Shown one piece after another: positions 7,278 to 45,918 of a stretch of 64,000 bases of DNA. The position numbers and the translations under genes are program-made. The notes under the pieces were generated by a model. It saw only the letters and a program-made list of their open reading frames with translations. It was not told the origin of the DNA and made no database searches. Numbering within the stretch: the stretch's first letter is position 1; each line of letters opens with the position of its first letter. The DNA is from Scyliorhinus canicula (lineage: Eukaryota), in contig NC_052160.1 of assembly GCF_902713615.1 (NCBI RefSeq), positions 137,744,737-137,808,736 of the forward strand, given 5' to 3'.

Positions 7278-7718
7278 ATGGTTCTGACTATGAAAACTGA
7301 AACTCCATTTGACCTACAAGTAACAAACTCACATTGTTTGTATATTTTTAGTGTTTAAGCGATGCTCAGTTTGTGTCCAACAGGCCTGGAGTTGGGTTCA
7401 CTTCATCCACTTTGAAAATTCACCCGAACGTTCTGAGCAATTTCACTGCAGCTACAGAAATAGAAATGGTTCACTAAACGTAGACCCACACACCTCTGAA
7501 ATATTAAATTAAAGGTTTAGAATGAGCAAGAATTGAACGCAGGAGCCTTCAATGATTGCAGTGCATTTTACACTATAATCCAGTCCGTACATTAAAAACA
7601 GAAAATACTTTTGACATTTTTAACATTTGGTTGGTTCATTATGTTTTGAGCAATGAAAAGATGCTCAGTTTTTCAGCATTTTGAACTTTTGTTGATTGTG
7701 TTTCTCATTTATCAACAG

Positions 7719-8045
7719 GTACATGGGAGCCAATTGTATCAGAGATCAGTGGTGTTGTGGGAAATGTCGCCACTGTACCATGTCTGTACACGGAGGAGGA
7801 GAAATACTATCAGAAACTCTTGTGTAAAGTCACCTCTAGAAATAAATGCACCATTATTGCCAGCTCTAATGGGGCTGTAACCAATCTGCAAAATGGGAGT
7901 GTTTCAATCACTATTAATAATTCTCATAATTTTACTGTTACCCTGGGCAACATTAATAAAGCCGATGAAGGAGAGTACTGGTGTGGAGCAACAAGAATAA
8001 CAAACATAAAGATCGTCCAGGTAAAAAATCTGACAACTGTTGAAG
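7719..8045 (+). CDS. Gene A exon: Ig V-set domain D2 (CD300/pIgR/MDIR-like)
   Basis: caacag|GT acceptor, GAAG|gtaagg donor, 327 bp phase 1-1; TVPC...LLCK...KC...DEGEYWCG with the extra C-C' cysteine pair. Confidence 0.92.
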
Positions 8046-8879
8046 GTAAGGTTCAATATAAAATTATTATCATTCAATCAGTGTTGAATAAAACTCCCAA
8101 AACAATAACAATTGGTCAATGCTTAGTTCTTTATTTACACATTGCGGCCACCCTACTTCATCTCAACCTTTCAGCCCATCCTTCTCTTACTTTCCCCCTC
8201 GCTAAGTTTAGCTCAATTTCCCCCGAAGAGCATCTATGAAATTTGTCACAATTACACCTTGTGGTACAGGTAGAACGTCTCAGATCCGCTGACCAAAAAA
8301 ACAAGTGTCCATCCACAAACCAGACATTTTTAGGATGCTCAAGGCACCAATTTTAACTGAGTGAAATTTTTTAAAACGCACTGGACAATTCGGCTAGGTG
8401 CCACGTTGGCACGATGTGGCTCCAGACTAGATACTGGCTTCACCATCCACTCTATCCGCCGCTGCATATGATCCTTACACCAGCTGACCCGGCCTCACAT
8501 GAACCACCCGTGGCCTGGACTGCCCACCCTTCACCCCAGCAAGATCTGAAAGCCATGACTGGATTGGAGGTACTGTCCCTAGTTCCACATTTAACAAGTT
8601 CCAGCTTCCATCAGCTCTCTGGGTAAAGTCTTCAAAAATTTCACGAATACTACAAGAAAATATAAATGTTAAAAATAAATTGAGAGTTTGTGCAATACCT
8701 CACAGATTATTGTCCTCCCAACACTATAAACTCTTTGTGAAGGCCCCTCAGAATCTACCTTTTCCTCAGCTTTAAACACCCAGGTTCACTTTCCATAAGT
8801 ATAGTACGTTGAAGATAATAATTGTGGTGGTTGGCAGTTATTCATCAAATTATTCATACATGTTTATTTCTGACAATAG

Positions 8880-8910
8880 GAAGACCAAATGGTTCCAACG
8901 ATACCTCAAG
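8880..8910 (+). CDS. Gene A stalk exon (GRPNGSNDTS)
   Basis: caatag|G...CAAG|gtaaga, 31 bp phase 1-2; identical exon at 26473. Confidence 0.8.
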
Positions 8911-9830
8911 GTAAGATTTTAATTTGCAACTTCTAAATATCAATCTTGTGCCATCCTCATTGAAGCCACGGTTGTTAGATAATCCTGCTTTCCACACAGG
9001 TCATGATGAGCAATGCGATGTTATTAAATTACTATAATCCACGCAACCACCATATTGATGCCATATATTTCCTCATAATTCTGCCATTGATTGTCTTACC
9101 ATTTAATACACACATATCGAAGCCAGGGGGCGACGTTTTTCAGACCTTGGCAGTAATCATTCGGTGCGATAATATGAGAGAGTTACATTAACACTTTCTG
9201 CTGATACCTTCCCTTACGGAACATCCGACACCCCAGCCCAGCGTTTATTCATTCACGGGATGTTGATGCTGCTGAAAAACCCTCATTCATTGCCCATCCC
9301 TAATTGCCCTTGATAAAATGTTGGTAAGCCACCACCTTGAACCCCTGCTGTCCATGTGATGCCAATACACCTGTGTTGTACGGTGGAGAGGGTTTTGACA
9401 CAGAAAAGGTGATGGAATCATGATCCACTTACAGGTCAAGTTAGTGTGGTAGTTAAGAAGGTGAATTTGAGGTGGTGCTGCTTTACCTGTTGGCCTTGTC
9501 TTTCCAACTGGTGATGGTCACAGGTTTGGAAGGTGTTGCTGAAGAAGCCTTAGAACACTGCTGTAATGCATCCTCAACAGAGAGATGCAGTCTCACCAGA
9601 ACACAGCTCGTCCCTGCGCAATTCCTGTTAGAGATATTTTCCCTGTGTGTACAAAGCCCAAAACTCCTAGGTGTGATTACACTTTGAAAATCACCCCATA
9701 GCTCGTACAAACTGTCAATGTGTTCAATATCATTTTCCAGAATTGTTGGGATGTTACTGATGGTCATTTTGCATAAACTGTGGGTTAATTTATTTTGTAC
9801 TGTATTAATTATAATTCCTTGTTTAATCAG

Positions 9831-9937
9831 AGAGGTTCTGCTGAAGATATGGACTATATTCCGTTGGCTGCTCTTTGCGGCTCTGGCTGTTTGCTCCGCT
9901 TCAGTCACATTCTATGAACATTTTGCAAAAGGGCCAG
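9831..9937 (+). CDS. Gene A transmembrane exon
   Basis: taatcag|A...CCAG|gtataa, 107 bp phase 2-1; REVLLKIWTIFRWLLFAALAVCSASVTFYEHFAKGP. Confidence 0.88.
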
Positions 9938-10604
9938 GTATAAAATATGAAATCTTTTTGCTCTAATATTTACAGATATTTAACTTCAGCCTAAAAACTC
10001 AGGCACTTTGAAAGTTGCCAAGAAAAACAACACATAATCCACAAGAAAATAAGTTCTCTTTGTGAAAATGTAACGAGGGAGCCATTCGAGTGTGATAACA
10101 ATGACCTTTGGGCTGAATTTTATGCTCGTCGACGGAAAGGATAAAAATGTCAGTTCGTCAGGAGATTTTCATTTTTACGCGGGAGTGCAAGATGGGAAAA
10201 GTTGTGTAGACACTCAATGCAAAGCACTGTTTAATTAAATTTTTATTCAAAATGCATACCTGTGTCCAATAGTGGCCTTGAACATGGGTAAGGGAGCATC
10301 AACAGTGCCCCTGGAGCAGGCACAGTATGGTGCATTGTATAACCTGGAGCCCATGATGTGCCCCAGAGCTGTGGGCACCAGATGCAAAATAGAGAGCTTC
10401 CCCGAACCCAGGAAATTGGAGCAATATCGCAGTGCGAGGTTATTGCAAACAAACCTCAGCACTTACATCAGGATGTCTCCATCCACACTCTCACCTATTT
10501 TTTCGCCATGTATCGCTTGAAGTATTTCACTTACAGAAAGAAGGTCAATTCCTCTGTTTTCTTCATTACGATTGATTAAATTTATTTGTTATTCAGTTCT
10601 GCAG

Positions 10605-10738
10605 GCCAGCAAATGATGGGTTCTGTGGAAACATCAGCCAGAGAACATCAATGGGGTCAGAGCTGCATTCGAAGACCGGCCAGAAGGTTGACTAATACCT
10701 ACACGAATGTCCAGAATATTTTCACCTTGCTTTTATAA
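10605..10738 (+). CDS. Gene A cytoplasmic tail exon
   Basis: ttctgcag|GC phase 1; GQQMMGSVETSAREHQWGQSCIRRPARRLTNTYTNVQNIFTLLL*; AATAAA about 90 bp downstream. Confidence 0.72.
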
Positions 10739-10830
10739 GTTACTTTACCGTTTTGCAGTATTTTTATTCTTTATGACAATCTGAAAATCTTTGTAAAGTC
10801 TTGAGAAACTATGTGAACTGCTTTCATTAT

Positions 10831-10836
10831 AATAAA
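10831..10836 (+). terminator. Polyadenylation signal, gene A
   Basis: AATAAA conserved at the homologous position 28637-28642. Confidence 0.6.
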
Positions 10837-11540
10837 AACAACTGGATGATAACATTTCTTGATGTTTTTGATATTAAGGGGCAGTGGATGCCGGAACACG
10901 ATCCAAATTTGAGGAGGAGATAGATAGGTTTTTAATTAGTGGTGGAATGAAGGGTTATGGCAATGGGCAGGATGGTGGAGATGGGGCCTGGACGAGATCA
11001 GCCCAGGTTGTTAGGGGAGGCGATGGCGCAGTGGTATTGTCACAAGACTAGTAATCCAGAGACCCAGAGGTCTGGGATCCTGGGTTCCCACCACGGCAAA
11101 TGGTGAAATTTGAATTAATCTGGAATGAAAAGTATAATGATGACCATGAAGCCAGTGCCGATTGTCATAAAAAACCCATCTGGTTCACTAAGGTCCGTCG
11201 GGGAAGGGAATCAGCCGTCCTTACCTGGTCTGGCCTACATGTGACTCCGGACCCACACAACAATGCTTCGCCCCTCAGTTCAAGGGCAATTAGGGATGGG
11301 TAACAAATGCTGGCCCAGCCCAGCGATGCCCACATCCAAAGAGCGAATAAGAAAAAGTATTGAATGGTGGAGGGGTTGAATTGCCGACCCTTGCTCTTGG
11401 TTCCTATAGTCTTATGTTTGTGTCCTAATAAGTCAAATGTGACTTGCACAGGGGAAAAAATAGAATTTGGACTTATTTTTTAACATTGCTTTCCTTGTAA
11501 AGCAAGAGAAATGGGAGCTTACATTTGGTGCACTTATTCT

Positions 11541-13053
11541 ATCATCCTCACATTAATTTTATATTGCAATTATCAGTAAACAGCCTTCCTTCTTTAAGCT
11601 TGGGGGAGTGATTCGGGATGGCACGGTCACACAGTGGTTAGCACTGCTGCCTCACACCTCCAGGGGCCCGGCTTCAATTCCGGCCTCGGGTGGCTGTCTG
11701 TGTGGAGTCTGCATGTCCTCCCCGTGTCTGCGTGGGTTTCCTCCGGGTGCTCCGGTTTCCTCCCACAGTCCAAAGATGTGCAGGTTAGGTGGATTGGCCG
11801 TGCTAAATTGCCCCTTAGTGTCCAAACGGTTAGGTGAGGTTACTGGGTTATGGGGATAGGGTGGAGGCATGGCCTTAAGCGTTTCCAAGAACCGGTGCAG
11901 ACTCAATGGGCCGAATGGCCTCCTTCTGTACTGTAGGGATTCTGTGATTCAACGATCTCGTTGAATCCTGTGAGAGGCCTCTCGTGAGATTTGCGACGCT
12001 TGTAATGCCTCACGAGAACCAACGGAATCTCACAAGACGTCGCGATCTGGATCTTGCTCTCACTGCGCGTGACCCAGATCGGTATATTTAAATGAGCCAT
12101 TCGGTGTTCGCTGGATTCTCCCGGCACTCGGGATGTAACGGCCGCTCCTTGGAGATCTTCGTCAGGATGCCATTTGGAGCTGGTTTCCACAAACGTGGAT
12201 CAGGGATCACAGACTCAGGGTGGGGTGGGGGGCGGGGGGGGTTGCTCCCAGCCGTTAGAGACCCCTGGGTGGTCGGGCACAGGGCAAGGTGATACCGTGG
12301 GACTCCCGATGGCAGCCTGCCACCTTGGCCCTCCCACCCTGGCACCTTAGCCCTGCCACCCTGGCACCTTGGCAATGCCATCTTGCTGCTGTCTGGGTGC
12401 CAGGCTGGCAGTACCATCGTGTCCAGGTAGCAGGTTGACACTGATGGCGATCAGGCCCAGTGGAGCCTTTACAGGTGGAGGAGGGGTGACAGGGTGTTCC
12501 CAATGACCTCCTCAAAGTTGGGGTCAGAGGGGTCAAAAACAGGGTGGGAGGACTGAAAGTGTGCGGGGTGGGGGGGCACAAAGATCGGGTCAGTATTTCA
12601 AAATGCGAGGTGCATTTCCTGCCGGTGAGCAGAAGCAGGAAATCGCTCAAAGTGCGGCCTCAGGGGGGAGTCACTCCCCTCGGCCAAAAGAACAGCAAAG
12701 TGCCGTTCAATATTGGGGTGTTTTTCAGCTCTGCAGCCACCCAGAAACACCCTGCTAAACGCGTGCCAACCAGACATAAACATTGTCTGCTTGAATTGCC
12801 CTGAGGTTTCTCATCAACCCTCTTGGGATGAAGCTCAAATCTAGTTGGATTTGTAGCTTCGGATGAGCTGTGGGGTTAGTGAAGTGCCCAATTTAACTCT
12901 GCAATCCTCGGAAGAATTGGACTTCACAGGCTGTTGGGGGACAGGGCTTACACTCTGCAAATTTATATCACTGCATGTGTGTCCTGATTGTACATGCTTC
13001 ACCTGAACCAATTGACTGTTGTTTCTACAACCCTTTGGTTAGATAGTTCTGTT
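11541..13053 (+). repeat. Left arm of a long inverted duplication (unique DNA + V-SINE + MITE + unique DNA)
   Basis: Reverse complement of 18835-20516; ORFs 12544-12804(+) and 19311-19568(-) translate almost identically. Confidence 0.92.
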
Positions 13054-13159
13054 TTTGGTACATTTAGAATCCTTGGCTTAAATATTCCACCCATTCCTGA
13101 CGATGGGATATTCCGGTCCTGCCAATGGTGACCACCCGTGGTGCAATCCCGAGTGGCAG

Positions 13160-13850
13160 GAGATGCCAGGAAGGCAAAACACCACATTGAAATTGGCCAG
13201 CACAATGTTGTAGGCGTCACAGAGATGTAGCTGCAAGGAGATCAAGGCTGGGATCTACATATACAATGTTAAGGTTGCATTGTGAGTATGGAATGAAGTT
13301 AAATCGATGCCAGGGAGCGATATAGCCTCAGAAGGTGTAGAATCTCTGTGGGTAGAGTTGAGGAATCACAAAGGTAAAAAAGACCCTGATGGGAGTTATG
13401 TACAGGCCCCCAAGCAGTAGTCAGGGTGTGGGGCAGAATACAAATCAGGAGACAGAAAAGACATGTAAAAAAGGCAATATCACAATAATCTTGGGGGACT
13501 TCAATATACAGGTGGACTGGGAAAATCAGGTTGTGTAGTGGATCCCAAGAAAAGGAATTTGTGGAATGTCTAAGAGATGGTTATTTGAAGCAGCTTGTGA
13601 CAAAGCCAACTAGGGAACAGACAACTCTGGATTTGGTGATGTGTAATGAGGCAAATTTGATGAGGGAACTTAAGGTGAAGGAACCCTTAAAGAGCAGTGA
13701 CCACAATATGATAGAATTTACCCTGCAGTTTGAGAGGGAGTAGCTGCAATCAGAGGTAACGGTATTACAATTAAATAAGGGTATCTACAAGGACATGAGG
13801 GAGGAGCTGGCCAGAGTTGATTGGAGAAGGATCTAGCAGGGAAGACAGTC
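13160..13850 (+). mobile_element. CR1 LINE ORF2 endonuclease fragment
   Basis: EFVECLRDGYLKQLVTKPTREQTTLDLVMCN...SSDHNMIEF. Confidence 0.8.
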
Positions 13851-14299
13851 TTCACGGTGGAAGACACCAGTGGGATTCCAGAGCTCAAATTGAATTGTTA
13901 TTCATGACCCAAGTAGGAGGCATTTGGATTAATTTCCTGCATAAAGCACCAAGAGGATAATTTATTATATTGATACACATTACAGCAAGAAGCAAAACAA
14001 CCAGAAATTGAAATTGAAAAGATATTTTCACATAGAGACAGCAGGATGCTCCATCCCGCTGAACCGCATTTCTGCCCCATCACGCCGGCGGGATGTTCCA
14101 TTACGCTGGCCAGTCAATCGGGTTTCCCATTGTGGGGCAGCCCACGCTGTCAGGAAACCCCCAGGCTGCCAGCAAAACGGAGCATCCCAACGGCGGAGCA
14201 TCCCGCCCAATATCTTTACTTAATGTCGGAATTTGGCAATGGTCAGCCAACAAGAGATCATTTCCTCAAATTGCAACAAGTGGCATCGACACAAATAAT

Positions 14300-14442
14300 G
14301 TTGTGAAGCAGTATGATTGGTCAGCTTCTCTTATCCTGTATGTGTTGGGCAGATATTGCTGGATCAAGGAGGAAGTAAATGATTCATCGCAGATCTTCTG
14401 ACCGATACAGAGACACTGAAAACTGTGGAAACCATTGGGAGC
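14300..14442 (+). promoter_or_regulatory. Putative proximal promoter/5' UTR of gene B
   Basis: Non-repeat block conserved with 36770-36919; inverted CCAAT 14316-14320, GATA (CTTATC) 14330-14335, GAGGAAGT Ets/PU.1-type site 14369-14376. Confidence 0.5.
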
Positions 14443-14482
14443 ATGATTATTACTGCAATGCTGTTCCTCACTTTGATATCAA
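14443..14482 (+). CDS. Gene B leader (signal peptide) exon
   Basis: ATG...TCAA|gtaaga, MIITAMLFLTLIS, phase 1; paralog at 36920. Confidence 0.85.
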
Positions 14483-14574
14483 GTAAGATTTTCCAATTCT
14501 ATATTTGGAGTAACAGCTCATGTTTATGTCTGAGAAAAATGGCACGACGTTTCTATTTTTTAAATTCAGTTCGG

Positions 14575-14788
14575 GGATGTGGGTGTCGCTGGTTATGCCA
14601 GCATTTATGGCCCATCCCTAGCTGCCCTTCAGAAAGTGGTGGTGAGCTGCCTTCTTGAACCGCTGCAGTCTGGGTGTAGGTACACCCACTGTGCTGTTCG
14701 GGAGGGAGTTCCAACGACAGTGAAGGAACAGCGATCTATTTCCTAGTCAGGATGGTGAGTGACTTGGAGGGGAACCTCCAGGTGGGGT

Positions 14789-14821
<33 letters not shown>

Positions 14822-15370
14822 CCCAGGTATCTGCTGCTCTTGTCCTTCTGGGTGGTAGTGGTCGTGGATTTGGAAGGTGCGATCTAAGGAACCTTGGTGA
14901 GTTACTGAGGTGCATCTTGTAGATGGTACACACGGCTGCCACTGTTCGCAGTGGTCGAGGGTTTGAATGTTTGTGGAAGGGGGAGCAATCAAGTGGGGCT
15001 GCTTTGTCCTGGATGGTGTTGAGCTTATTGAGTGTTGTTGGAGCTGCGCTCAACCAGACAAGTGGCGAATAAGCCATGGGGACGTCACGGGGTCCAGAGT
15101 CGATGTTGAGGACTCCCAGGGCAACTCCCTCCCGACTGTATACCACTGTACCACCACCTCTGCTGGGTCTGTCCTGCCGAATAGACAGGACATTTCCAGA
15201 AATGGTAATTGTGCAGTCTGTGACATGGGCTATAAGATATGATTCTGTGAGTATGACTATATTAGGCTGTTGTTTAGCTAGGCTGTGAAATAGCTCTCCC
15301 AACATTAGCACAAGCCCCCAGATGTTAGTAAGGAGGAACTTGCAGGGTCGGCAGAGCTGGGTTTGCTGTT
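14575..15370 (-). mobile_element. L2/CR1-group LINE remnant (internally deleted)
   Basis: ORF 14736-15311: KQQPNIVILTESYL and LDTIQDKAA-type motifs; same insertion at 37050-38160. Confidence 0.75.
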
Positions 15371-15423
15371 GTTATTTCCGGAGCCTGGTTCGGTGTCGGG
15401 CAGCTGTCGGGCAGTCCGCCCGT

Positions 15424-16470
15424 TTTTAGCAGTATATATATATATATATATTTAGCAGTATATATATATATATATTTAGCAGTATATATATATATTTAGC
15501 AGTATATATATATATTTAGCAGTATATATATATATATTTAGCAGTATATATATATATATTTAGCAGTATATATATATATTTAGCAGTATATATATATATA
15601 TTTAGCAGTATATATATATATTTAGCAGTATATATATATATATTTAGCAGTATATATATATATTTAGCAGTATATATATATATTTAGCAGTATATATATA
15701 TTTAGCAGTATATATATATTTAGCAGTATATATATATATTTAGCAGTATATATATATTTAGCAGTATCTATATATTTAGCAGTATATATATATATATATA
15801 TATTTAGCAGTATATATATATATTTAGCAGTATATATATATATATTTAGCAGTATATATATATATATTTAGCAGTATATATATATATTTAGCAGTATATA
15901 TATATATATTTAGCAGTATATATATATATTTAGCAGTATATATATATATTTAGCAGTATATATATATTTAGCAGTATATATATATTTAGCAGTATATATA
16001 TATATTTAGCAGTATATATATATTNNNNNNNNNNNNNNNNNNNNNNNNNNNNNNNNNNNNNNNNNNNNNNNNNNNNNNNNNNNNNNNNNNNNNNNNNNNN
16101 NNNNNNNNNNNNNNNNNNNNNNNNNNNNNNNNNNNNNNNNNNNNNNNNNNNNNNNNNNTTTAGCAGTATATATATATATTTAGCAGTATATATATATATT
16201 TAGCAGTATATATATATTTAGCAGTATATATATTTAGCAGTATATATATATTTAGCAGTATATATATATATATTTAGCAGTATATATATATATATTTAGC
16301 AGTATATATATATATTTAGCAGTATATATATATTTAGCAGTATATATATATATATTTAGCAGTATATATATATATATTTAGCAGTATATATATATATATA
16401 TTTAGCAGTATATATATATATATTTAGCAGTATATATATATATTTAGCAGTATATATATATATTTAGCAG
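15424..16470. repeat. Compound tandem array TTTAGCAG(TA)n with an assembly gap at 16025-16158
   Basis: Directly visible; constant 8-mer separated by TA runs of variable length. Confidence 0.97.
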
Positions 16471-17356
16471 CGTGTCGCGTCTTTTCGTCCGACGTCACTT
16501 CGTCCAACGACACTTCGTCCACGTCTTTTGGTCCAACGTCTTTTTGTCCGCCCGTCTTTTGGTCCAACGTCACTTCGTCCAATTATCCAATTACAAATTA
16601 GCTCCGTATAAAACCATTTAATTGATAAAATGCAAGTACAATACAGCAAGTGAATTTAATTGCTAAAATGCAAGTAATTGATAAAATGCAAGTAAAATGT
16701 AAGTTGAAAAATGCAGTTAAAAAGTTAAAAAATCTAAAAATGCAGTTAAAAAATCTAAAAGTTTACTAATTACTTAAAATTCCCGAAATTACTTAAAATT
16801 GATGTAAATTGTAAATTCCCGAAATTCCCTAAAAGTTAGATTTCCAGAACTGTACCCGAGAGAGAATAATGGGGAGAGGACAAGATGATTTGATATTCTA
16901 CAATTCCGACACACAGAGATATAAGTGGGAGTCTAATTGGATTTAGACAATGAGTGCAGTTCTGAAAGAAGCAGATTTAAACTCGATTTTCGTCGAGTGA
17001 TTAAAACCTCTGGTTGGCAGTGGGTTCTGACATTACAGGTCTGAAATGATCAAATATTCCATCAGATACAATGGCTCTCATCACGCTGGAGCATACATGG
17101 GTGAATATCCTGCAGCTTATCTTAATAATGTCTGGAGATCAAGCAGCACAAATGCAGAACTCAACCTCAAGAGGCGAAATAGGTGGAGAGGATCCTTGAG
17201 CAGTAACATTGAAAAACTAAATTAAACTATTTGTAATTGGATAATTGGACGAAGTGACGTTGGACCAAAAGACGGGCGGACAAAAAGACGTTGGACCAAA
17301 AGACGTGGACGAAGTGTCGTTGGACGAAATGACGTCGGACGAAAAGACATAGCACC
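16471..17356. mobile_element. Non-autonomous DNA transposon with long modular TIRs (Mutator/foldback-like)
   Basis: 16479-16598 and 17229-17348 are inverted, 119/120 identical; ATTTAGCAG (9 bp) on both flanks. Confidence 0.8.
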
Positions 17357-17379
17357 ATTTAGCAGTATATATATATATA

Positions 17380-18834
17380 TTTTAAGGGCCTAACGGGTGT
17401 TTAATCTTTTTTTTCCTTTTAAAGCTCTTTGGGAATTCAAATCAGAGGGGATGGAAGCTAGGGCAGTTACCAGCTCCTCCTGTAGGATGTGGATGGTGAT
17501 TACACCAGCCGGATGTGCACCCAACTCCAGCTCCTCGGAGACCGCGTTAGGGAACTGGAGCTAGAGCTGGATGAACTTCGGATCATCCAGGAGGCAGAGG
17601 GGGTGATAGAGAAGAGTAACAGGGAGGTAGCCACACCCAAGGTGCAGGACAAGAGTAGCTGGGTTACACTCAGGGGAAGGAAAAGGAACAGGCAGACAGT
17701 GCAGGGATCCTTCGTGGCCGTTCCCCTTCAAAACAAGTGTACCGTTTTGGATGCTGTTGGGGACCTACCGGGGGAAGGTCCTAGCAGCCAGGTCTCCGGC
17801 ACTGAGCCTGGGTCTGTGGCCCAGAAGGGAAGGGGAAGAATACAAAAGCAATAGTGATAGGAGCCTCAATGGTTAGGGAAACGGGTAGGAGATTTTGTGG
17901 TTGCGAACGAGACTCCCGGAAGGTATGTTGCCTCCCGGGTGCCAGGGTCAGGGATGTCTCGGATTGAGTCTGCAGGATTCTGAAGGGGGAGGGGGAGCAA
18001 CCAGAAGTCGTGGTGCACATAGGCACCAACAACACAGGTAAGAAAAGGGATGAGGATCTAAAAAGGGAGTTAGGTTGGAAGCTAAAGAGCAGGACAAGCA
18101 GAGTACTGATCTCAGGATTGCTACCGGTGCCACGTGCAAGTGAGGCAAGGAAGAGAGAACGAGTGCAGCTGAACACATGGCTACAGGGCTGGTGCAGGAG
18201 GGAAGGCTTCAGATATGTGGATCATTGGGATATCTTCTGGCGAAGGTGGGACCAGTACATGAAGGACGGATTGCACCTAAACTGGAGGGGGCACCAATAT
18301 CCTGGGTGGGAGGTTTGCTCGAGCTCTTCGGGAGGGTTTAAACTAGTTTGGCAGGGGGATGGGAACCAGAGCTATGGATCAGAGGATAGGGTAGCTGTTG
18401 AATGGGCTGAAATAGTATGCAGCAAGTCTGTGAGGAAGGATAGACAGTTGATAGGGCAAAGTTGCACTCAGTGGAATGGGTTAAAGTGTGTCTGTTTCAA
18501 TGTAAGAAGTGTCAGGAATAAGGGAGATGAACTCAGAGCATGGATCAGTACTTGGAACTATGATGTGGCCATTACGGGGACATGGATTTCACAGCGGCAA
18601 GAATAGTTGTTCGATGTTTTGTGGTTTAGATGTTTTAAGAAGAATAGAGAGGGAGGTAAAAGAGGAGGGGGAGTGGCACTGTGAATTAGGGAGTGCACCA
18701 CACTGCAGAAAATGTGGTAGTGGAGGAAGGTTTGTCTTCTGAGTCAGTATGGGTGGAAGTCAGAAACAAGAGAGGAGCAGTCACTTTATTGGGAGTTTTC
18801 TATAGACCCCCCAATAGCAGCAGTGAGATGGAGG
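17380..18834 (+). mobile_element. CR1 LINE 5' portion: ORF1 (SGNH esterase-type) and start of ORF2
   Basis: VHIGTNNTG...DGLHLNWRG and LKCVCFNVRSVRNKGDELRAW; truncated at the junction with the inverted arm. Confidence 0.85.
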
Positions 18835-20516
18835 AACAGAACTATCTGACCAAAGGATTGTAGAAACAGCAGTCAATTGGTTAAGATGAGGCAGCTACAA
18901 TCAGGACACACATGCAGTAACATAAATTTGCAGAGTGTAAGTCCTGTCGCCCAACAGACTGGGAAGTCCAATTCTGTCCAGGATTGCAGAGTTAAACTTC
19001 CTTTTTCATTTTTTTCCAATTAAGGGGCAATTTAGCGAGGCCAATCCACCTAGCCTGCACATCTTTGAGTTGTGGGGGCGAAACCCACGCAAACACGGGG
19101 AGAATGTGTAAACTCCACATGGACAGTGACCCAGAGCCGGGATCAAACCTGGGACCTCGGCGCCCTGAGGCCACAGGGCTAACCCACTGCGCCACCGTGC
19201 TGCCCCTTGATTGCAGAGTTAAAATGGACACTCCACTAACCCCACAGCTCATCCGAAGCTACAAATCCAACTAGATTTGAGCTTCATCCCAAGATGGTTG
19301 ATGAGAAACCTCAGGGCAATTCAAGCAGACAATGTTTATGTCTGGTTGGCACGCGTTTAGCAGGGTGTTTCTGGGTGGCTGCAGTGCTGAAAAACACCCC
19401 AATATTGAACGGCACTTTGCTGTTCTTTTGGCCGAGGGGAGTGACTCCCCCCTGAGGCCGCACTTTGAGCGATTTCCTGCTTCTACTCACCGGCAGGAAA
19501 TGCACCTCGCATTTTGAAAATACTGACTCAATCCTTCTCTCCCCCCCCCCCCCCCCCCCCCTGCACACTTTCCGCCCTCCCCCCCCCCCCTCCTTTTCAC
19601 CCTTCTGACCCCAACCTTGGGGAGGTCATTAGGAACACCCTGTCACCCCTCCTCCACCTGGTAAGGCTCCACTGGGCCTGATCGCCATCAGTGTCAATCT
19701 GCTACCTGGACACACTGGTACTGCCAGCCTGGCAGCCAGGCAGTGGCAAGATGGCACTGCCAAGGTGCCAGGGTGGGAGGGTCACGGTGATAGGCTGGCA
19801 TAGGGAGTTCCCACCACCCCCCCCCCCCCCACCCCCCCGCCCCCACCACCCCACCACCCCGGGTCTGTTTTGCCTGATCCAGCTCTAAATCCTGACGAAG
19901 ATCTCCCAGGAGTGACCGTTACATCCCAAGTGCTGGGAGACTCCGGCGATCGCCTAATGGCTCATTTAAATATACCGATCTGGGTCACGCGCAGCGAGAG
20001 CGAAATCCAGATCGCGACGTCTCGTGAGATTCCGTTGTTTCCAGCGTCGCAAATCTCACGAGGGGCCTCTCGCAGGATTCAACGGCCTTTTTGGGCCCAA
20101 CGAGGCCGTTGAATCACAGAAGCCCTACAGTGCAGAGGGAGGCCATTCGGCCCATTGACTCTGCACCGGTTCTTGGAAACAGCACCCTACTTAAAGCCAC
20201 GCCTCCACCCTATTCCCACAACCCAGTATCTCACCTAACCTTTTGGACACTAAGGGGCAATGTAGCACGGCCAATCCACCTAATCTGTACATTTTTGGAC
20301 TGTGGGAGGGAACCGGGGCACCCGGAGGAAACCCACGCAGACACGGGGAGAATGTGGCAAACTCCACAGAGACAGTCACCCGAGGCCGGAATTGAACCCG
20401 AGCCCCTGGAGATGTGAGGCAGCAGTGCTAACCACTGTGCGGCTGTGCCACCCCGAATCACTCCCCCAACCTTAAAGAAGCTGATAATTGCAATATAATG
20501 TTAATGTGAGGATGAT
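18835..20516 (-). repeat. Right arm of the inverted duplication (in gene B intron 1)
   Basis: Reverse complement of 11541-13053 plus one extra SINE; absent at the homologous point of gene C intron 1 (about 41970). Confidence 0.92.
18997..19208 (-). mobile_element. Short V-SINE inserted after the duplication
   Basis: 15-bp TSD GATTGCAGAGTTAAA (18982-18996 and 19209-19223); empty site in the left arm. Confidence 0.9.
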
Positions 20517-21223
20517 TTTTGAATTTTAAATAAGAGTAATAAATGCAAAGTGAGGAGTTATGTTAACCCTTCACTACTCACTGGTTAGGTACTGTGTTCA
20601 ACTCTGGGCAACACACTTGAGGGAGGAGGTCAAGCCCCTGGCGAGGGCACAGGGCAGATTTACCAGGATGATACCAGGAATGTGGCAGTTTGGATTTGTG
20701 GGCAGATTGGAGAAATTGGGATTATTGTCCTTAGAGTAGAAAAGATTAAAGGGAAAAAAGTATTGAAATTGAGGAAGGGTCTCATGCAGCAGGTGGAGAG
20801 TAATTATTTCCTCTGCTGGTGGATTGGTAACAAGAGATCATAGAGTTAAAATAGTTGGGAGAAAAAACAGTGGGTAAATGAGGAGACGTTATTTCACACA
20901 TTAGGCTGTTATCATCTGGAAAACACCACCTGGAATAATCATGGAATGAGATTCCAGAGGAACTTTCCAAAGGCAGATGGACATACATTTGAAGGGGACC
21001 AATGTGCAGGGTTTCGGAGGGGGGCTGGGGTGTGGGATTAAATTGGACAATAAATGTTCTAAGAGCTGGCACAGACATGACGGGCCGAATGGCCTCCTTC
21101 TCTGCTTTAAGGTTCTTGACACCAGTCCCACTCAGGATTTGTGTGTGTCCCCTTGTGAAAGGATTGTCTAAAATTGATTGATGGGATATTTCCAGCTTTC
21201 TTAAAACATGTTTCACCCAACAG

Positions 21224-21553
21224 CTTCACAGACACAGACGGCTCCGATAGTGATGAGAGCTGCAGTGGGAGAAACCATCACAGTGGGATGTCTACAGGGA
21301 GAAAGGTACAAAGGAAACTCTGCAATCTGGTGGTGCAGGACAACTTCGGGAACTCGGTGCGATCATATATCGAGCATTGATGGGCAGAAAGTCAGAAATG
21401 ATTATCGAGGAACATCAATTGCTAATACAAATGGCAAGATTTCAGTAACCATACGACACCTTCAAGAGATAGAAACAGGAGCATACTGCTGTGGACTAGA
21501 AGATAACGGCTCATTCAATATTTCAGATGTTATATTGCTGAAGGTTTTCACAG
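21224..21553 (+). CDS. Gene B exon: Ig V-set domain D1
   Basis: ccaacag|CT...ACAG|gtaaga, 330 bp phase 1-1; TVGC...IWWC...RC...ETGAYCCG. Confidence 0.9.
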
Positions 21554-21715
21554 GTAAGAATATTGCAGAAGATTGATTCTAGCGTTGATAATGTGGTTGG
21601 GCTGCAGTAACACTGCTGCTGTGTGAGCTCAGACTATGAAAGGATTATCACAGTTCCTTATGTACAAGTAAAGACCTCCCATCCTCCCATTTCTATCCAT
21701 TTCCATTAACCTCTC

Positions 21716-22850
21716 TAAATATAGGATAAAAGCAAATTACTGCGGATGCTGGAATCTGAAACGAAAGAGAAAATGCTGGAAAATCTCAGCAGGTCTGGCA
21801 GCATCTGTAGGGAGAGAAAAGAGCGAACGTTTCGAGTCCGATGACTCTTTGTCAAAGCTAAAAGACAGAAAAAGTGAGAAATATTTATACTGTTGAGTAA
21901 GAATGAAAGATGAGCCACAGCTACAGAAACCGAGGGAAACAGGGTGCTAATAGCCACAGAAAGCAAGGGGGAAGATGGCAGTCCCCAGAGAGAACAAAAG
22001 GTGTAAAAGGCCAAACAGCAGAAAAACTAACATCAGAGGCTAAACTGTGACAGATGGAGATGTGGGGGGGATGGGAAGGGGTAAGCAAAGGGGAGAAGGG
22101 ATAAGGAAAGGTTGATAAGATGGGGCGGGTAGTTAAATATATATTAGGAAAGACAAGAAAGAAAGAAATGGTAAGAGATAGTTGAAATGAAATGGGATGA
22201 AAAGCACAATCCTCCGCCATTTTTGCCATCTCCAGCATGATGCCACCACCAAGCACGTCTTCCCTTCACTCCCTCTGTCAGCATTCCGCAGAGACCGTTC
22301 CCTCCGAGATAATCTGGCCCACTCCTCCACCCAACACCTCTCCCATCACCCATGGCACCTTCCCATGCAATCGCAGAAGGTGTAACACCTGACCCTTTAC
22401 CTCTTCCATGCTTAACATCCCAGGCCCAAAACATTCATTCCAGGTTAAGCAGCGTTTCACTTGCATCTCTTCCAATTTGGTCTATTGCATTCGCTGCTCC
22501 CAATGTGGTCTCCTCTATATCAGAGAGACCAAATACAGACTGGGTGATCGCTTTGCTGAGCATCTTCAGTCTGTGCGTATTCAGGACCCTGATCTTCCCG
22601 TTGCTTGCCATTTTAACACAAGACCCTGCTCCCATGCCCACATGTCTGTCCTTGGCCTGCTGCAGTGTTGCTGTGAAGCTCAATGCAAACTGGAGGAACA
22701 GCATCTCATCTTCCGGTTAGGCACGCTACAGCCTTCCGGTCTCAACATCGAATTCAACAACTTCAGATGATTAGCTCTACCCCACCTCGACCCATTTTGT
22801 TTTAATCCCATTTCATTTCAACTGTCTCGTAACATTTCTGTCTCACACCA
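21716..22850 (+). mobile_element. Penelope-like element: GIY-YIG endonuclease end with an inverted upstream pseudo-LTR
   Basis: ORF 22408-22770 NLVYCIRCSQCGLLYIRET...EHL...LGTLQPSGLN; about 22150-22200 is the reverse complement of the post-ORF sequence at about 22805-22850. Confidence 0.85.
21821..21860 (-). ncRNA. Degenerate hammerhead ribozyme in the Penelope pseudo-LTR
   Basis: Minus strand TTGACAA-A-GAGTC-ATCG-GACTC-GAAA-CGTT; stem II and GAAA intact, CUGANGA core has two changes. Confidence 0.5.
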
Positions 22851-24495: not shown

Positions 24496-25152
24496 TGACT
24501 TCCCACTTATTAATTAATAATAATAGTAACGCCTGATGTCTTTCATCACATCTGATATCAAAGTTGGCAAAATACTGCTGACGCCATGAAAAACCCTTCC
24601 CAAATTAGAACACGATGGCATTGAATCATAGAATTTACAGCGCAGAAGGAACATCTGACCATTTTCTTTAGTATAAAAGCAGTTCAGCAGCTAATCTCAG
24701 ACCCAATGGTTCTGGCGATGAAAACTGAAACTCCATTTGACCTACAAGTAACAAACTCACATTGTTTGTATATTTTTAGTGTTTATCCAAAGCGATGCTC
24801 AGTTTGTGTCCAACAGGCCTGGAGTTGGGGGTCCCTTCATCGACTTTGAAAATTCACCCGAACGTTCTGAGCAATTTCACTGCAGCTACAGAAATAGAAA
24901 TGGTTCACTAAACGTAGACCCACACACCTCTGAAATATTAAATTAAAGGTTTAGAACGAGCAGGAATTGAACGCAGGAGCCTTCAATGATCGCAGTGCAT
25001 TTTACACTACAATCCAGTCCGTACATTAAAAACAGAAAATATTTCTGACATTTTCAACATTTGGCTGGTTTATTATATTTTCAGCAATGAAAAGATGCTC
25101 AGTTTTTCAGCATTTTGAACTTTTATTGATTGTGTTTCTCATTTATCAACAG

Positions 25153-25479
25153 GTACATGGGAGCCAATTGTATCAGAGATCAGTGGCGTTGTGGGAAATG
25201 TCGCCACTGTACCATGTCTGTACACGGAGGAGGAGAAATTCTATAAGAAATTCCTGTGTAAAGTAACCTCTATAAATAAATGCACCATTATTGCCAGCTC
25301 AGATGGGGCTGTAACCAATCTGCAAAATGGGAGTGTTTCAATCACTATTAATAATTCTCATAATTTTGCTGTTACCCTGGGCAACATTAATAAAGCCGAT
25401 GAAGGAGAGTACTGGTGTGGAGCAGTGACAGTAAAGAACATAAAGATCATCCAGGTAAAACATCTGACAACTGTTGAAG
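25153..25479 (+). CDS. Gene B exon: Ig V-set domain D2
   Basis: Canonical AG/GT, 327 bp phase 1-1, 12 aa differences from gene A D2. Confidence 0.92.
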
Positions 25480-26472
25480 GTAAGGTTCAATATAAAATTA
25501 TTATCATTCAATCAGTGATGAATAAAACTCACAAAACAATAACAATTGGTCAATGCTGAGTTCTTTATTTACACATTGCGGCCACCCTACTTCATCTCAA
25601 CCTTTCAGCCCATCCTTCTCTTACTTTCCCCCTCGCTAAGTTTAGCTCAATTTCCCCCGAAGGGCATCTATGAAATTTGTCACAATTACACCTTGTGGTA
25701 CAGGTAGAACGTCTCAGATCCGCTGACCAAAAAAACAACAGTGTCCGTCCGCAAACCAGACATTTTTAGGATGCTCAAGGCACCAATTTTAACTGATTGA
25801 AATTTTTAAAAACGCACTGGACAACTCGGCTAGGAGCCACGTTGGCACGATGTGGCTCCAGACTAGATACCGGCTTCACCATCCACTCTATCCGCCGCTC
25901 CATATGATCCTTACACCAGCTGACCCGGCCTCACATGAACCTCCCGTGGCCTGGACTGCGCATCCTGCACCCCAGCAAGATCTGAAAGCCATGACTGGAT
26001 TGGAGGTACTGTCCCTAGTTCCACATTTAACAAGTTCCAGCTTCTATCAGCTCTCTGGGTAAAGAGTCCAAAACTTTCACTAATACTAATAGAAAATGTT
26101 GATATTAAAAATATATTGAAAGTTTGTGCAATACCTCACAGATTATTGTCCTTCCAACACTATAAGCTCATTGTGAAGGCCCCTCAGAATCTACCTTTTC
26201 CTCAGCTTTCGTGTCAGTCAAGGACAAAGACGTCCTCTCAAAAATCATTGTTCATTCATCCTGTGTTTGACTAACTGGCTTAAGAAAACGTAATCAGCAA
26301 GTGTTCAGGAAAAATGTAACATTTTCCCACCCTTCTGGCCACCCACTCCCACCATTTCGCTGCTCACAATACCCAGGTTCACTTTCCATAAATACAGTAC
26401 GTTGAAGATAATAATTGTGGTGGTTGGCAGTTATTCATCAAATTATTCATTCATGTTTATTTCTGACAATAG

Positions 26473-26503
26473 GAAGACCAAATGGTTCCAACGATACCTC
26501 AAG
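26473..26503 (+). CDS. Gene B stalk exon
   Basis: Identical to 8880-8910 with the same splice sites. Confidence 0.8.
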
Positions 26504-27427
26504 GTAAGATTTTAATTTGCAACTTCTAAATATCAGTTTTGTGCCACCCTCATTGAAGCCACGGTTGTTAGATAATCCTGCTTTCCTCACAGGTCATGAT
26601 GAGCAACGTGATGTTATTAAATTACTATAATCCACGCAACCGCCATCTTGGTGCCATATATTTCCTCATAATTCTGCCATTGATTGTCTTCCCATTTAAT
26701 ACACACATATCGAAGCCAGGGGGCGACGTTTTTCAGACCTTGGCAGTAATCATTCGGTGCGATAATATGAGAGAGTGACATTAACACTTTCTGCTGATTC
26801 CTTCCCTTACGGAACATCCGACACCCCAGCCCAGCGTTTATTCATTCACGGGATGTTGATGCTGCTGACAAACCCTCATTCATTGCCCATCCCTAGTTGC
26901 CCTTGATAAAATGTTGGTAAGCCACCACCTTGAACCCCTGCTGTCTATGTGATTTCGATACACCCACCGGTGTTGTACGGTGCAGAGGGTTTTGACGCAG
27001 AAAAGGTGAAGGAATCATGATCCACTTACAGGTCAAGTTAGTGTGGTAGTTAAGAAGGTGAAGTTGAGGTGGTGCTGCTTTACCTGTTGGCCTTGTCTTT
27101 CCAACTGGTGATGGTCACAGGTTTGGAAGGTGTTACTGAAGAAACCTTAGAACACTGCTGTAATGCATCCTCAACAGAGAGATGCAGTCTCACCAGAACA
27201 CAGCTCGTCTCTGCGCAATTCCTGTTAGAGATATTTTCCCTGTGTGTACAAAGCCCAAAACTCCGAGGCGTGACTACACTTTGAAAATCACCCCATAGCT
27301 CGGACAAACTGTCACTCCGTTCATTATAATTTTGCAGAATTGTTTTGACATTATTGATGGTCATGTTGCATAAACTGTGAGTTAATTTATTTTGTACTGT
27401 ATTAATTATAATTCCTTGTTTAATCAG

Positions 27428-27534
27428 AGAGGTTCTGCTGAAGATATGGACTATATTCCGTTGGCTGCTCTTTGCGGCTATGGCTGTTTGCTCCGCTTCA
27501 GTCACATGCTACGCACATTTTGCAAAAGGGCCAG
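27428..27534 (+). CDS. Gene B transmembrane exon
   Basis: REVLLKIWTIFRWLLFAAMAVCSASVTCYAHFAKGP, 107 bp phase 2-1. Confidence 0.88.
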
Positions 27535-27911
27535 GTATAAAATATGAAATCTATTTGCTCTAATATTTACAGATATTTTACTTCAGCCTAAAAGCTCAGG
27601 CACTTTGAAAGTTGCCAAGAAAAGCAACGCATAATCCACAAGAAAATAAGTTCTCCCTGTGAAATTTTAACAAGGGAGCCATTCGAGTGTGATAACAATG
27701 ACCTTTGGGGTGAATTTTAAACTCGTTAACAGAAAGGATAAAAATGTTAGTTCATCAGGAGATTTCATTTTTACGCGGGAGCGCAAGGTGGGGAAAATTT
27801 AAGTCGGCAGTCAAGGCAAAGCACTGTTTAATTAAATTATTTATTTATAATGCATGCCTGTGTACAAAGGCGGCCTTGAACATGGGTAAAGGAGGATCAA
27901 CAGTGCCCCTG

Positions 27912-28111
27912 AGGGCAGCACGGTGGTGCATTGAGTCCCAGGTTCGATCCCGGCTCTGGGTCACTGTCTGTGTGGAGTTTGCACATTCTCCCCGTGTTTG
28001 CGTGGGTTTCGCCCCCACAACCCAAAGATGTGCAGGGTAGGTGAATTGGGCACACTAAATTGCCCCTTAATTGGAAAAAATGAATTGGGTACTCTAAATT
28101 TATTTTTTAAA
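27912..28111 (+). mobile_element. Short V-SINE specific to gene B intron 5
   Basis: 13-bp TSD AACAGTGCCCCTG; empty site at about 10300 in gene A. Confidence 0.9.
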
Positions 28112-28411
28112 AACAGTGCCCCTGGACCAGGCACAGCATTGCATTGTATAATCTGGAACCCATGATGTGCCCCAGAGCTGTGGGCACCAGATGTAAAATA
28201 GAGAGCTTCCCCGAACCCAGGAAATTGGAGCAAGATCGCAGTGCGAGGTTATGGCAAACAAACCTCAGCACTTACATCAGAATATCTCCATCCACACTCT
28301 CACCTATTTTATCACCAGTATCGCTTGAAGTATTTGACTTACAGAAAAAAGTGAATCCATCCGTTTTCCTCATTCCGATTGTTTAAATTCATTTGTTATA
28401 CAGTTCTGCAG

Positions 28412-28590
28412 GCCAGCAAATGATCGTTTCTGTGGAAACATCAGCCAGAGAACATCAATGGGATCAGAGCTACACTCGAAGACCGGCCAGAAGGTTGACT
28501 AATACCTACACGAATGACCAGAATATTTTCACCTTGCTTTTAGAAGTTACTTTCCCATATTGCAGTGTTTTATACTTTATGACAATCTGA
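28412..28590 (+). CDS. Gene B cytoplasmic tail exon (extended relative to A)
   Basis: ttctgcag|GC; ...NTYTNDQNIFTLLLEVTFPYCSVLYFMTI*; GAA where gene A has TAA. Confidence 0.7.
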
Positions 28591-28636
28591 AAAGCTTTGT
28601 AAAGTCTTCACAAATTGTGCGAGCTGCTTTGATTAT

Positions 28637-28642
28637 AATAAA
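28637..28642 (+). terminator. Polyadenylation signal, gene B
   Basis: AATAAA homologous to 10831. Confidence 0.6.
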
Positions 28643-29599
28643 AACAACTAGATGATAAACTTTGTTGATTTTTTTTGACATTAAGGAGCAGTGGATGCCG
28701 GAACACTAAAGAAATTTGAGGAGGAGATAACCAGGTTTTTAATTAGTGGTGGGATGAAGTATTATGGGAATGGGCAGGATGGTGGGAGATCAGGCCTGGA
28801 CGAGATCAGCCAAGATTGTTAGGGAGGCGATGGTACAGTAGTGTTGTCATTAGACCAGTAATCCAGAGGTGCGGGATCCTAGTTCAAATCCCACCTTGGC
28901 AGATGGTGAAATTTCAATTCAATAAAAAAATCTGGAATGAAAAGTAGAATGATGACCATGAAACCATTGCCGATTGTCGTAAAAACCCATCTAGTTCACT
29001 AAGGTCTTTCAGGAAAGGGAATCAGCCGTCCTTACCGGTCTGGCCGAAATGTGACTCCAGATACACACAACAATCCTTCGCCCCTCAGTTCAAGGGCAAT
29101 TAGGGATGGGTAACAAATGCTGGCCCAGCCCAGCGACGCCCACATCCAAAGAGTGAATTTTAAAAAGTATTGAATGGCGGAGCAGGGCCGAGGGGTTGAA
29201 ATGCTGACTCCTGCTCCTGGTTCCTATGGTCTTACGTTTGTGTCCTTATGAGTAAAATGCGATTTCAGAAATTTTTATCTGAACCCAGAATTCATATTTA
29301 ATGATATTACTAGGGAATTACTAAACCCAAGGTCACTCTGAGTTGGAAGGTTGTGAATGAGTTTTGTTGTCCAGCAGCTACAATAGCTGATCCTCTCGCT
29401 TCGGAATCTCTTTGTCCAGCCACATGACTTTTAAAGTTCTGCAAGAGGGAATTATTTTGTGCTCACCCAACAGGATTACTTCTCTTAATCCCTCATTCAT
29501 GTGGCCAATTGTGAGTGTTCACACCCACCAGTCAAATGCTAGCTGTTTAATTCTTTCTAATTCAAGGAAGGTTAAGTGGGCTTTTTGCAAGAATTCCTA

Positions 29600-36919: not shown

Positions 36920-36959
36920 ATGGTTTTTACTGCATTGCTGTTCCTCACTTTGATATCAA
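36920..36959 (+). CDS. Gene C leader exon
   Basis: MVFTALLFLTLIS, TCAA|gtaaga, phase 1. Confidence 0.85.
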
Positions 36960-38160: not shown

Positions 38161-38163
38161 GTT

Positions 38164-45908: not shown

Positions 45909-45918
45909 AAGGGGACCA

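What the first reader, a model, noticed from the sequence alone, without database searches (positions are those of the whole stretch)
11541..20516. Gene B promoter and leader exon sit inside a 1.5-kb inverted duplication: a potentially invertible cassette
Seen: 11541-13053 and 18835-20516 are reverse complements, including non-repeat DNA and the same SINE-MITE nesting. The 5.8-kb loop holds the conserved promoter block and ATG exon of gene B. Gene C has neither arm at its homologous positions. The right junction has AACAG microhomology with a truncated CR1. Inference: crossover between the arms would flip the promoter and leader away from D1 and silence gene B, as a germline polymorphism or a somatic event.
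Basis: partly seen in the sequence, partly recalled or inferred. Interest (0 to 1): 0.72.

Follow-up and report, generated by a model that had tools for sequence, protein, structure and literature searches.

The report
Old inverted duplication around a leader exon
A catshark immune-receptor gene has its start (promoter region and signal-peptide exon) bracketed by two old, 90%-alike, oppositely oriented 1.5-kb copies of the same DNA; this is real and could in principle flip the gene's start, but nothing shows that it ever does, and it looks like a scar of a past copy-and-paste repair event.

Summary
Both arms carry the same SINE at the same site, with the same GTGATTC target duplication.

The loop does hold gene B's first coding exon. 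The ATG is at 14443 and the splice donor at 14483. The RefSeq model XP_038675793.1 (small-spotted catshark, "polymeric immunoglobulin receptor-like") matches leader 13/13, D1 110/110 and D2 97/98. Gene C has no arm in its readable sequence.

The "invertible cassette" reading is only a geometric possibility.
- The arms are old (K2P 0.106). They are 90% alike, and their longest perfect match is 99 bp.
- The loop is collinear with gene C.
- The public gene model needs the present orientation.
- No RAG signal sequences and no recombinase are present.

One ~290-bp tract is 99% identical (0 of 20000 permutations), so the arms exchanged sequence at least once.

The right arm cuts a CR1 LINE inside its endonuclease domain and joins gene-C-homologous DNA with a 3-nt overlap. 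This fits a microhomology-mediated inverted copy-paste.

An earlier scan note (s1-278635) reports the same architecture at a paralog downstream.

The parts
11541..13053 (.). Left arm of the inverted duplication. It lies in the intergenic DNA between gene A (CDS end about 10616) and gene B, and is the probable source copy. It contains a SINE at 11615-11950.
   Evidence: The intergenic position follows from the gene ranges.
18835..20516 (.). Right arm, the reverse complement of the left arm. It lies in intron 1 of gene B and is the probable derived copy.
   Evidence: The inner end abuts a 3'-truncated CR1. The outer end overlaps gene-C-homologous DNA by 3 nt, GAT at 20514-20516.
12592..12881 (.). 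Near-identical tract, paired with 19524-19234 in the right arm. It has 3 mismatches in 290 columns and is a probable gene-conversion tract.
   Evidence: The 315-column core has 6 mismatches against 107/1090 elsewhere; binomial P = 2e-8; 0 of 20000 permutations reach it.
18992..19208 (-). SINE present only in the right arm, with a perfect 15-bp target-site duplication TTTAACTCTGCAATC. It inserted after the duplication, and the near-identical tract ends about 25 bp from it.
13054..18834 (.). Loop (spacer) between the arms. Its nominal length of 5781 bp includes the assembly gap of estimated length.
13928..14442 (+). Promoter-proximal block homologous to gene C 36569-36919, in the same orientation. 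It has a B-specific 170-bp insertion at 14039-14208. It is called a promoter by position only.
14443..14482 (+). Gene B exon 1. ATG plus signal peptide MIITAMLFLTLIS, phase 1, with donor GT at 14483-14484.
   Evidence: It matches XP_038675793.1 (P0165) 13/13. The gene-range arithmetic places the CDS start here: 36920 - 14443 = 22477.
15425..16470 (+). (TATATATATATATTTAGCAG)n tandem array that contains the assembly gap 16025-16158. The unit orientation is the same on both sides of the gap.
16479..17348 (.). MITE-like insertion with 120-bp terminal inverted repeats that are 99% identical.
17385..18834 (+). 5' part of a CR1-like LINE: ORF1 with a GDSL-esterase domain and the start of the ORF2 endonuclease. 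It is cut off inside the endonuclease domain exactly at the right inner junction.
20517..20954 (+). DNA shared with gene C (41969-42428), including a 5'-truncated LINE 3' fragment. It is the ancestral sequence just outside the right arm.
21224..21553 (+). Gene B exon 2, the D1 V-set domain. Phase 1 at both ends.
25153..25479 (+). Gene B exon 3, the D2 V-set domain. The stalk exon (26472-26504) and the TM exon (27426-27533) follow.

Best explanation
This is a fossil inverted segmental duplication in the small-spotted catshark cluster of pIgR-like (two V-set domain, Arg-in-TM) receptor genes.

Origin (inferred). A 1.5-kb piece of the intergenic DNA upstream of gene B, already carrying a SINE, was copied in reverse orientation into intron 1 of gene B. 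The copy landed at a break inside a CR1 LINE and was joined by short microhomology. The CR1's 3' part was lost. This is a FoSTeS/MMBIR- or MMEJ-type templated insertion.

Layout (shown). The two copies now bracket the promoter-proximal DNA and the signal-peptide exon (14443-14482). In the assembled orientation that exon splices to D1, as in RefSeq XP_038675793.1.

Later history. The arms have diverged to about 10%. One ~290-bp patch was homogenised later, which I read as gene conversion (inferred).

Current behaviour (inferred). The pair is formally a substrate for non-allelic homologous recombination that would invert the leader and disable gene B. Given the divergence and the ≤99-bp perfect tracts, I expect this to be rare at most. 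I read the structure as a passively carried scar, fixed in the functional orientation, not as a switch.
For: - Arms, shared nested SINE and sharp ends.
- Age: arm K2P is 0.106, against 0.04-0.11 for the A/B and B/C unit comparisons.
- The right arm is the derived copy. The CR1 is 3'-truncated inside its endonuclease domain at 18834/18835, which retrotransposition does not produce. B/C homology starts at 20514 and arm homology ends at 20516, a 3-nt GAT overlap. FoSTeS gives nearby inverted insertions with 2-5 nt microhomology (PMC2583991).
- Leader exon and orientation. The loop block 13928-15400 is collinear with gene C 36569-38189.
- Conversion tract: 6/315 mismatches against 107/1090, with 0 of 20000 permutations. 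Its edge lies next to a post-duplication SINE.
- Low recombination potential: the longest perfect tracts are 99, 89 and 61 bp, against the MEPS values.
- No RSS. The only Pfam hit among the loop ORFs is a CR1 ORF1 esterase. No Rfam family in 10000-22000 reaches significance.
- Four RefSeq genes with the MIITA(L/M)LFLTLIS leader are all modelled leader-to-D1 in sense.
Against:
- Human polymorphic inversions are known with almost the same geometry, for example HsInv0347 with 1.6-kb IRs and a 7.1-kb inversion (PMC3961182).
- NAHR between closely spaced repeats can use matches shorter than 50 bp (PMC2583991).
- The conversion tract proves the arms can still pair.
- Which arm is the source rests on one truncated CR1. 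The AACAG microhomology is unverified.
- Genome-wide copy number of the arm sequence was not measurable.
Confidence: 0.7

Rival explanations
1. Germline inversion polymorphism. Rare or recurrent NAHR between the arms, most likely in the 99%-identical tract, flips the promoter and leader cassette in some catshark haplotypes. Gene B, and similarly built paralogs, would then be on or off depending on haplotype.
For: - The inverted geometry and size match validated human IR-mediated inversions (1.6-kb IRs / 7.1 kb and 2.8-kb IRs / 5.1 kb).
- In those cases the breakpoints fall in the most identical part of the IRs.
- The conversion tract shows arm-to-arm exchange.
- An inversion that moves promoter, exon 1 and intron 1 is known at human CTRB1-CTRB2 (PMC6145291).
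Against: - Overall identity is 90% and the perfect tracts are ≤99 bp.
- Only one orientation has been seen: the reference assembly and the RefSeq model.
- All four modelled B-type paralogs have leader and D1 in sense.
- No read data are available.
Confidence: 0.12
2. Scar of a real past inversion. The arms arose as the inverted duplications that staggered breaks leave at the two ends of an inverted segment, so the loop has flipped at least once.
For: The arms sit exactly at the two ends of one segment and have sharp boundaries.
Against: - The loop's promoter and leader block is collinear with gene C, and the leader faces D1. A single formative inversion would have left it reversed, so this model needs two events.
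- The truncated CR1 and the 3-nt overlap fit an insertion-with-deletion better.
Confidence: 0.07
3. Two independent insertions, in opposite orientation, of a 1.5-kb composite mobile element or high-copy repeat. This would not be a local duplication.
For: - Both copies have sharp ends.
- Both are absent from gene C.
- Genome-wide copy number could not be measured.
Against: - No target-site duplication, no terminal inverted repeat and no Helitron-type ends at the arm termini (sequence read directly).
- There is no other copy of the non-SINE 1.1 kb in the 64-kb window, whereas true repeats such as the SINE occur eight or more times.
- One copy interrupts a CR1 with loss of its 3' part, which a simple insertion would not cause.
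Confidence: 0.07
4. Programmed or somatic DNA inversion switch that gives variegated expression of the receptor in immune cells.
For: Only the geometry, and the fact that paired receptor families are often variegated.
Against: - No RSS pairs.
- No recombinase in or near the loop.
- The arms are diverged and TE-laden rather than short conserved sites.
- No vertebrate precedent is known to me for promoter flipping by a dedicated recombinase outside V(D)J (my own knowledge).
Confidence: 0.02
5. Assembly artefact: a false duplication or a mis-oriented contig at the gap.
For: An N gap lies inside the loop.
Against: - The arms differ by about 10%, by several indels and by a private SINE with its own TSD, so they are not one sequence assembled twice.
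- Each arm is contiguous with its own flank and exons.
- Flipping the right-hand contig would break the gene B and gene C models.
- The tandem-repeat unit has the same orientation on both sides of the gap.
Confidence: 0.02

Closest known systems
Inverted-repeat-mediated (NAHR) inversion polymorphisms in humans, e.g. HsInv0347 and HsInv0278 (PMC3961182)
   Same: Two inverted low-copy repeats of 1.5-3 kb flank a 5-7 kb unique segment. The repeats are made of TE fragments plus unique DNA. A crossover in the most identical part inverts the segment.
   Different: Both orientations were demonstrated in those cases; none is shown here. The arms here are only about 90% alike, with ≤99-bp perfect tracts.
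CTRB1-CTRB2 16.6-kb inversion (PMC6145291)
   Same: A germline inversion whose segment carries the promoter region, exon 1 (signal peptide) and intron 1.
   Different: There the inversion swaps first exons between two head-to-head genes, so both stay functional. Here the leader would face away from any coding exon and gene B would be disabled. No polymorphism is shown here.
Palindromes with unique spacers kept alike by arm-to-arm gene conversion (primate X/Y palindromes; my own knowledge)
   Same: Inverted arms around a spacer, with evidence of arm-to-arm sequence exchange.
   Different: Those arms are longer than 8 kb and more than 99% identical throughout. Here only one ~290-bp patch is homogenised and the rest has decayed.
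FoSTeS/MMBIR templated inverted insertions (PMC2583991)
   Same: A nearby segment is copied in inverted orientation, with junctions of 2-5 nt microhomology and loss of DNA at the insertion site.
   Different: Here the mechanism is inferred from an old, fixed event. Only one junction's microhomology (GAT) could be checked, against a paralog.
Bacterial invertible promoters (fimS, hin)
   Same: The idea of a promoter between inverted repeats.
   Different: Those use short specific sites and a dedicated recombinase. Neither is present here.

Membership tests
NAHR-competent inverted low-copy repeat pair (inversion substrate) | Two homologous copies in inverted orientation on one chromosome, flanking unique DNA | tested here: met
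NAHR-competent inverted low-copy repeat pair (inversion substrate) | A stretch of uninterrupted identity of MEPS size (about 134-232 bp in cultured mammalian cells; 300-500 bp in human meiosis; PMC2583991) | tested here: not met
   The longest perfect tracts are 99, 89 and 61 bp. The thresholds come from mammals and are relaxed for closely spaced repeats.
NAHR-competent inverted low-copy repeat pair (inversion substrate) | Both orientations observed among individuals or species | not testable with these tools
Site-specific invertible promoter switch | A dedicated recombinase gene and short conserved recombination sites | tested here: not met
   The loop ORFs are LINE fragments only. The arms are 1.5 kb of diverged TE-bearing DNA.
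RAG-mediated inversional joining | A 12/23 pair of heptamer-nonamer recombination signal sequences | tested here: not met
   No site with heptamer ≤1 mismatch and nonamer ≤2 mismatches in 11000-21300.
Microhomology-mediated templated inverted insertion (FoSTeS/MMBIR/MMEJ) | 2-5 nt microhomology at the novel junctions | tested here: inconclusive
   The outer junction has a 3-nt GAT overlap between arm homology and gene-C homology. For the inner junction, AACAG cannot be checked without the CR1 consensus.
Microhomology-mediated templated inverted insertion (FoSTeS/MMBIR/MMEJ) | Template close to the insertion site, with disruption or deletion at the target | tested here: met
   The source is 5.8 kb away. 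The CR1 is cut inside its endonuclease domain and its 3' part is missing.
Transposable element (arms as two insertions) | Target-site duplications, terminal repeats or other element termini, and further copies | tested here: not met
   No TSD or TIR at the arm ends. No further copy in the window. Genome-wide copy number was not tested.
pIgR-like / CD300-like V-set receptor gene (gene B) | Signal peptide, V-set domains and a transmembrane segment, as in the named RefSeq proteins | tested here: met
   Pfam V-set for D1 and D2. Exact or near-exact match to XP_038675793.1 over all exons.

The most novel reading that the evidence does not exclude
Crossovers in the homogenised ~290-bp tract would flip the promoter and leader, so different catshark haplotypes would carry different sets of switched-off activating receptors. 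Repertoire variation would then arise by inversion rather than by gene loss.
Probability: 0.07. Interest if true: 0.65.

Novelty: new member of a known kind. Interest (0 to 1): 0.3.

Why it matters
If flipping occurred, it would be a simple structural way to vary which members of a shark innate-receptor array are usable. It would also be a vertebrate example of a promoter and first-exon inversion in an immune gene family.

As it stands, the value is mostly descriptive:
- a cleanly dated inverted copy-paste event with readable junctions;
- one gene-conversion patch between 10%-diverged repeats;
- a confirmed first exon for RefSeq gene XP_038675793.1.

It also flags a place where assemblies and gene models of this cluster could differ between individuals.

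Tried and rejected
There is no read-level evidence on orientation, copy number or leader usage. I sent those places to no search tool afterwards and worked beside them.
- **The look-up of sequencing runs** (two searches were busy). Two sample sets of the species (DNA by the tool's guess) hold the left stretch. Likely RNA runs are among the 10 studies whose runs hold D1-exon words. Their kind is only guessed, and near-identical paralogs could supply the words, so this is not evidence for gene B itself.
- **The search for homologous proteins** with D1 alone found nothing, because of the length window. The representative search and then P0002 as query solved this.
- **The look-up of encoding contigs** for shark proteins returned gene ranges but no DNA. 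P0003 and a left-arm ORF were not on record. Paralog and sister-species cassettes could therefore not be read.
- **The search of earlier findings** by sequence with the core was blank, which means nothing.
- **Rfam** on 10000-22000 gave only a chance-level mir-378 hit inside the CR1.
- **RSS scan** was negative.
- **CR1 consensus for the AACAG claim**: no second copy in the window.
- **Staggered-break inversion origin**, TE-insertion origin and assembly artefact were considered and ranked low. Reasons are given under the rival explanations.


Full report

Yes. The repeat finder reports inverted pairs 12596-12906/19209-19519 (98%), 12334-12551/19581-19798, 12892-13053/18835-18996 and 12016-12168/19889-20041.

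Outside one tract the arms differ at 107 of 1090 aligned sites (K2P 0.106) and by about ten indels. Both ends are sharp in both copies.

About 1.1 kb of each arm is not SINE and has no other copy in the 64-kb window. The SINE inside the arms has the same boundaries and the same GTGATTC flanks in both. The two arm SINEs are 91% alike, against about 83% to other SINE copies. The segment was therefore duplicated with its SINE already in place.

**2. The assembly gap (16025-16158)**

The gap lies in a (TATATATATATATTTAGCAG)n array. The unit has the same orientation on both sides. The left contig carries gene A's last exons, the left arm and the gene B leader, all on the + strand. The right contig carries the right arm, gene B D1-D2-TM and the gene C leader, all on the + strand.

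Reversing either contig would break two public gene models, so the join is coherent. The loop length is only nominal.

**3. What the genes are**

D1 (21224-21553) and D2 (25153-25479) are V-set domains. A full-library HMMER search with D1 found shark proteins named "polymeric immunoglobulin receptor-like".

Among the Scyliorhinus canicula entries, XP_038675793.1 (P0165) matches the window's leader 13/13, D1 110/110 and D2 97/98. Its stalk and TM exons map at 26472-26504 and 27426-27533.

The collection's gene ranges put the next gene's CDS start 22,477 bp after gene B's. That equals 36920 - 14443, the distance between the two leader ATGs I had found by aligning genes B and C. The leader exon is therefore 14443-14482, phase 1, with donor GT at 14483, and it lies inside the loop. 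The left arm lies in the A-B intergenic DNA, and the right arm lies in B's intron 1.

The TM carries an Arg and the tail is short.

Three more RefSeq genes (XP_038675788-90, XP_038675791 and XP_038675792) have a one-residue-different leader and 96-98% identical D1.

**4. Comparison with the paralogs in the window**

Blocks of unit B align with unit C in the same order and orientation:
- 7667-11439 with 25101-29259;
- 13928-15400 with 36569-38189;
- 20514-20954 with 41969-42428;
- D1 with D1.

Neither arm has a counterpart in C even at low stringency. N gaps at 40791-41550 leave a blind spot. The loop's promoter and leader block therefore has the ancestral orientation.

The block upstream of the ATG is homologous between B and C at K2P 0.11, no better than neutral DNA here. 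"Promoter" is therefore positional.

**5. How the duplication arose (inferred)**

At the right inner junction a CR1-like LINE on the + strand stops inside its endonuclease domain at 18834. This LINE has an ORF1 esterase and the start of ORF2. Retrotransposition truncates LINEs at the 5' end, not the 3' end, so this is a rearrangement breakpoint.

At the right outer junction, homology to gene C begins at 20514 and arm homology ends at 20516. That is a 3-nt GAT overlap.

The simplest history is that the left copy is the source. A reverse-oriented copy was then pasted into intron 1 at a break in the CR1, with loss of the CR1's 3' part. FoSTeS/MMBIR-type template switching yields such nearby inverted insertions with 2-5 nt microhomology (PMC2583991).

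A staggered-break inversion origin would have left the loop reversed relative to gene C, which it is not.

**6. Later events**

A short SINE with a perfect 15-bp TSD entered the right arm only, at 18992-19208.

Next to it, 12592-12881 is 99% identical between the arms (3 of 290 mismatches). The wider 315-column core has 6 mismatches, against an expected 31. The binomial P is 2e-8, and none of 20000 permutations reaches it.

A few-hundred-bp tract is the usual size of a gene-conversion event (PMC3961182). No Rfam family and no ORF of note lie there. I read it as one conversion event that occurred when the arms were already about 9% diverged.

Selection on a shared element is not excluded.

**7. 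Does it work as an invertible cassette?**

Geometrically it could. Human polymorphic inversions exist with 1.6-kb IRs around 7.1 kb and with 2.8-kb IRs around 5.1 kb, and their breakpoints fall in the most identical part of the IRs. An inversion carrying promoter, exon 1 and intron 1 is known at CTRB1-CTRB2.

Here, however:
- the longest perfect matches are 99, 89 and 61 bp. In mouse cells, reducing uninterrupted homology from 232 to 134 bp cut recombination 20-fold, and human meiotic NAHR uses 300-500 bp, although closely spaced repeats can use less;
- only one conversion event is visible over the whole life of the repeat, and crossovers accompany only a minority of conversions (my own knowledge);
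- the reference orientation is the functional one, and all four modelled B-type genes have the leader in sense;
- there are no RSS pairs and no recombinase, so a programmed or somatic mechanism has nothing to rest on.

**8. What could not be done**

I sent those places to no search tool afterwards.

The available DNA runs are short-contig sets. They could not have phased a crossover inside the near-identical tract anyway.

An earlier first-stage note (s1-278635) says that a second ~1.5-kb inverted pair with a near-identical core brackets the leader of another gene 25.6 kb beyond this window. I could not read that DNA. In the paralog P0164, the distance from the preceding gene's end to the ATG is 3,889 bp, against 3,827 bp here. 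This fits a shared architecture but does not prove one.

**9. Verdict**

The inverted duplication is real, old and cleanly interpretable, and the leader-in-loop anatomy is right. The invertible-switch reading is an untested possibility of low prior.

My odds:
- passive scar in fixed orientation: about 0.7;
- segregating or recurrent germline inversion: about 0.12;
- past-inversion scar: 0.07;
- TE pair: 0.07;
- somatic switch: 0.02;
- artefact: 0.02.

Noticed in passing
window 16479-17348: MITE-like element with 120-bp terminal inverted repeats 99% identical and subterminal 15-mer arrays. It is inserted into the TA-rich tandem array that also holds the assembly gap, and it looks like a young insertion.
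   Followed up: partly
window 18992-19208: Short SINE present only in the right arm, with a perfect 15-bp target-site duplication TTTAACTCTGCAATC. It post-dates the inverted duplication and sits at the edge of the near-identical tract.
   Followed up: yes
window 36920 onward (gene C) and 7715-8050 (gene A D2): Public gene models cross unit boundaries. The product that starts at gene C's leader ATG is 792 aa with many V-set hits. The upstream gene has three 284-aa isoforms that differ in which D2 exon they use, and X3 uses the D2 at 7715-8050 (97/98). This is either real inter-unit splicing or model merging.
   Followed up: partly
window 14039-14208: A 170-bp insertion specific to gene B interrupts the block just upstream of the leader exon that is otherwise homologous to gene C.
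   Followed up: no
window 27426-27533: The gene B transmembrane exon encodes an Arg within the membrane span (IFRWLLF), followed by a short tail.
   Followed up: partly
window 30300-34400 and 43500-47900: The stretch upstream of gene C's leader (about 30300-34400) holds a Gypsy-type LTR retrotransposon with RT/integrase ORFs. Gene C's long intron 1 holds about 4 kb of very GC-rich, proline-codon-rich low-complexity repeats (43500-47900). Together with the N gaps at 40791-41550, these explain why unit C is twice as long as unit B.
   Followed up: no
Nothing was laid, and I did not send them to any search tool afterwards.
   Followed up: no
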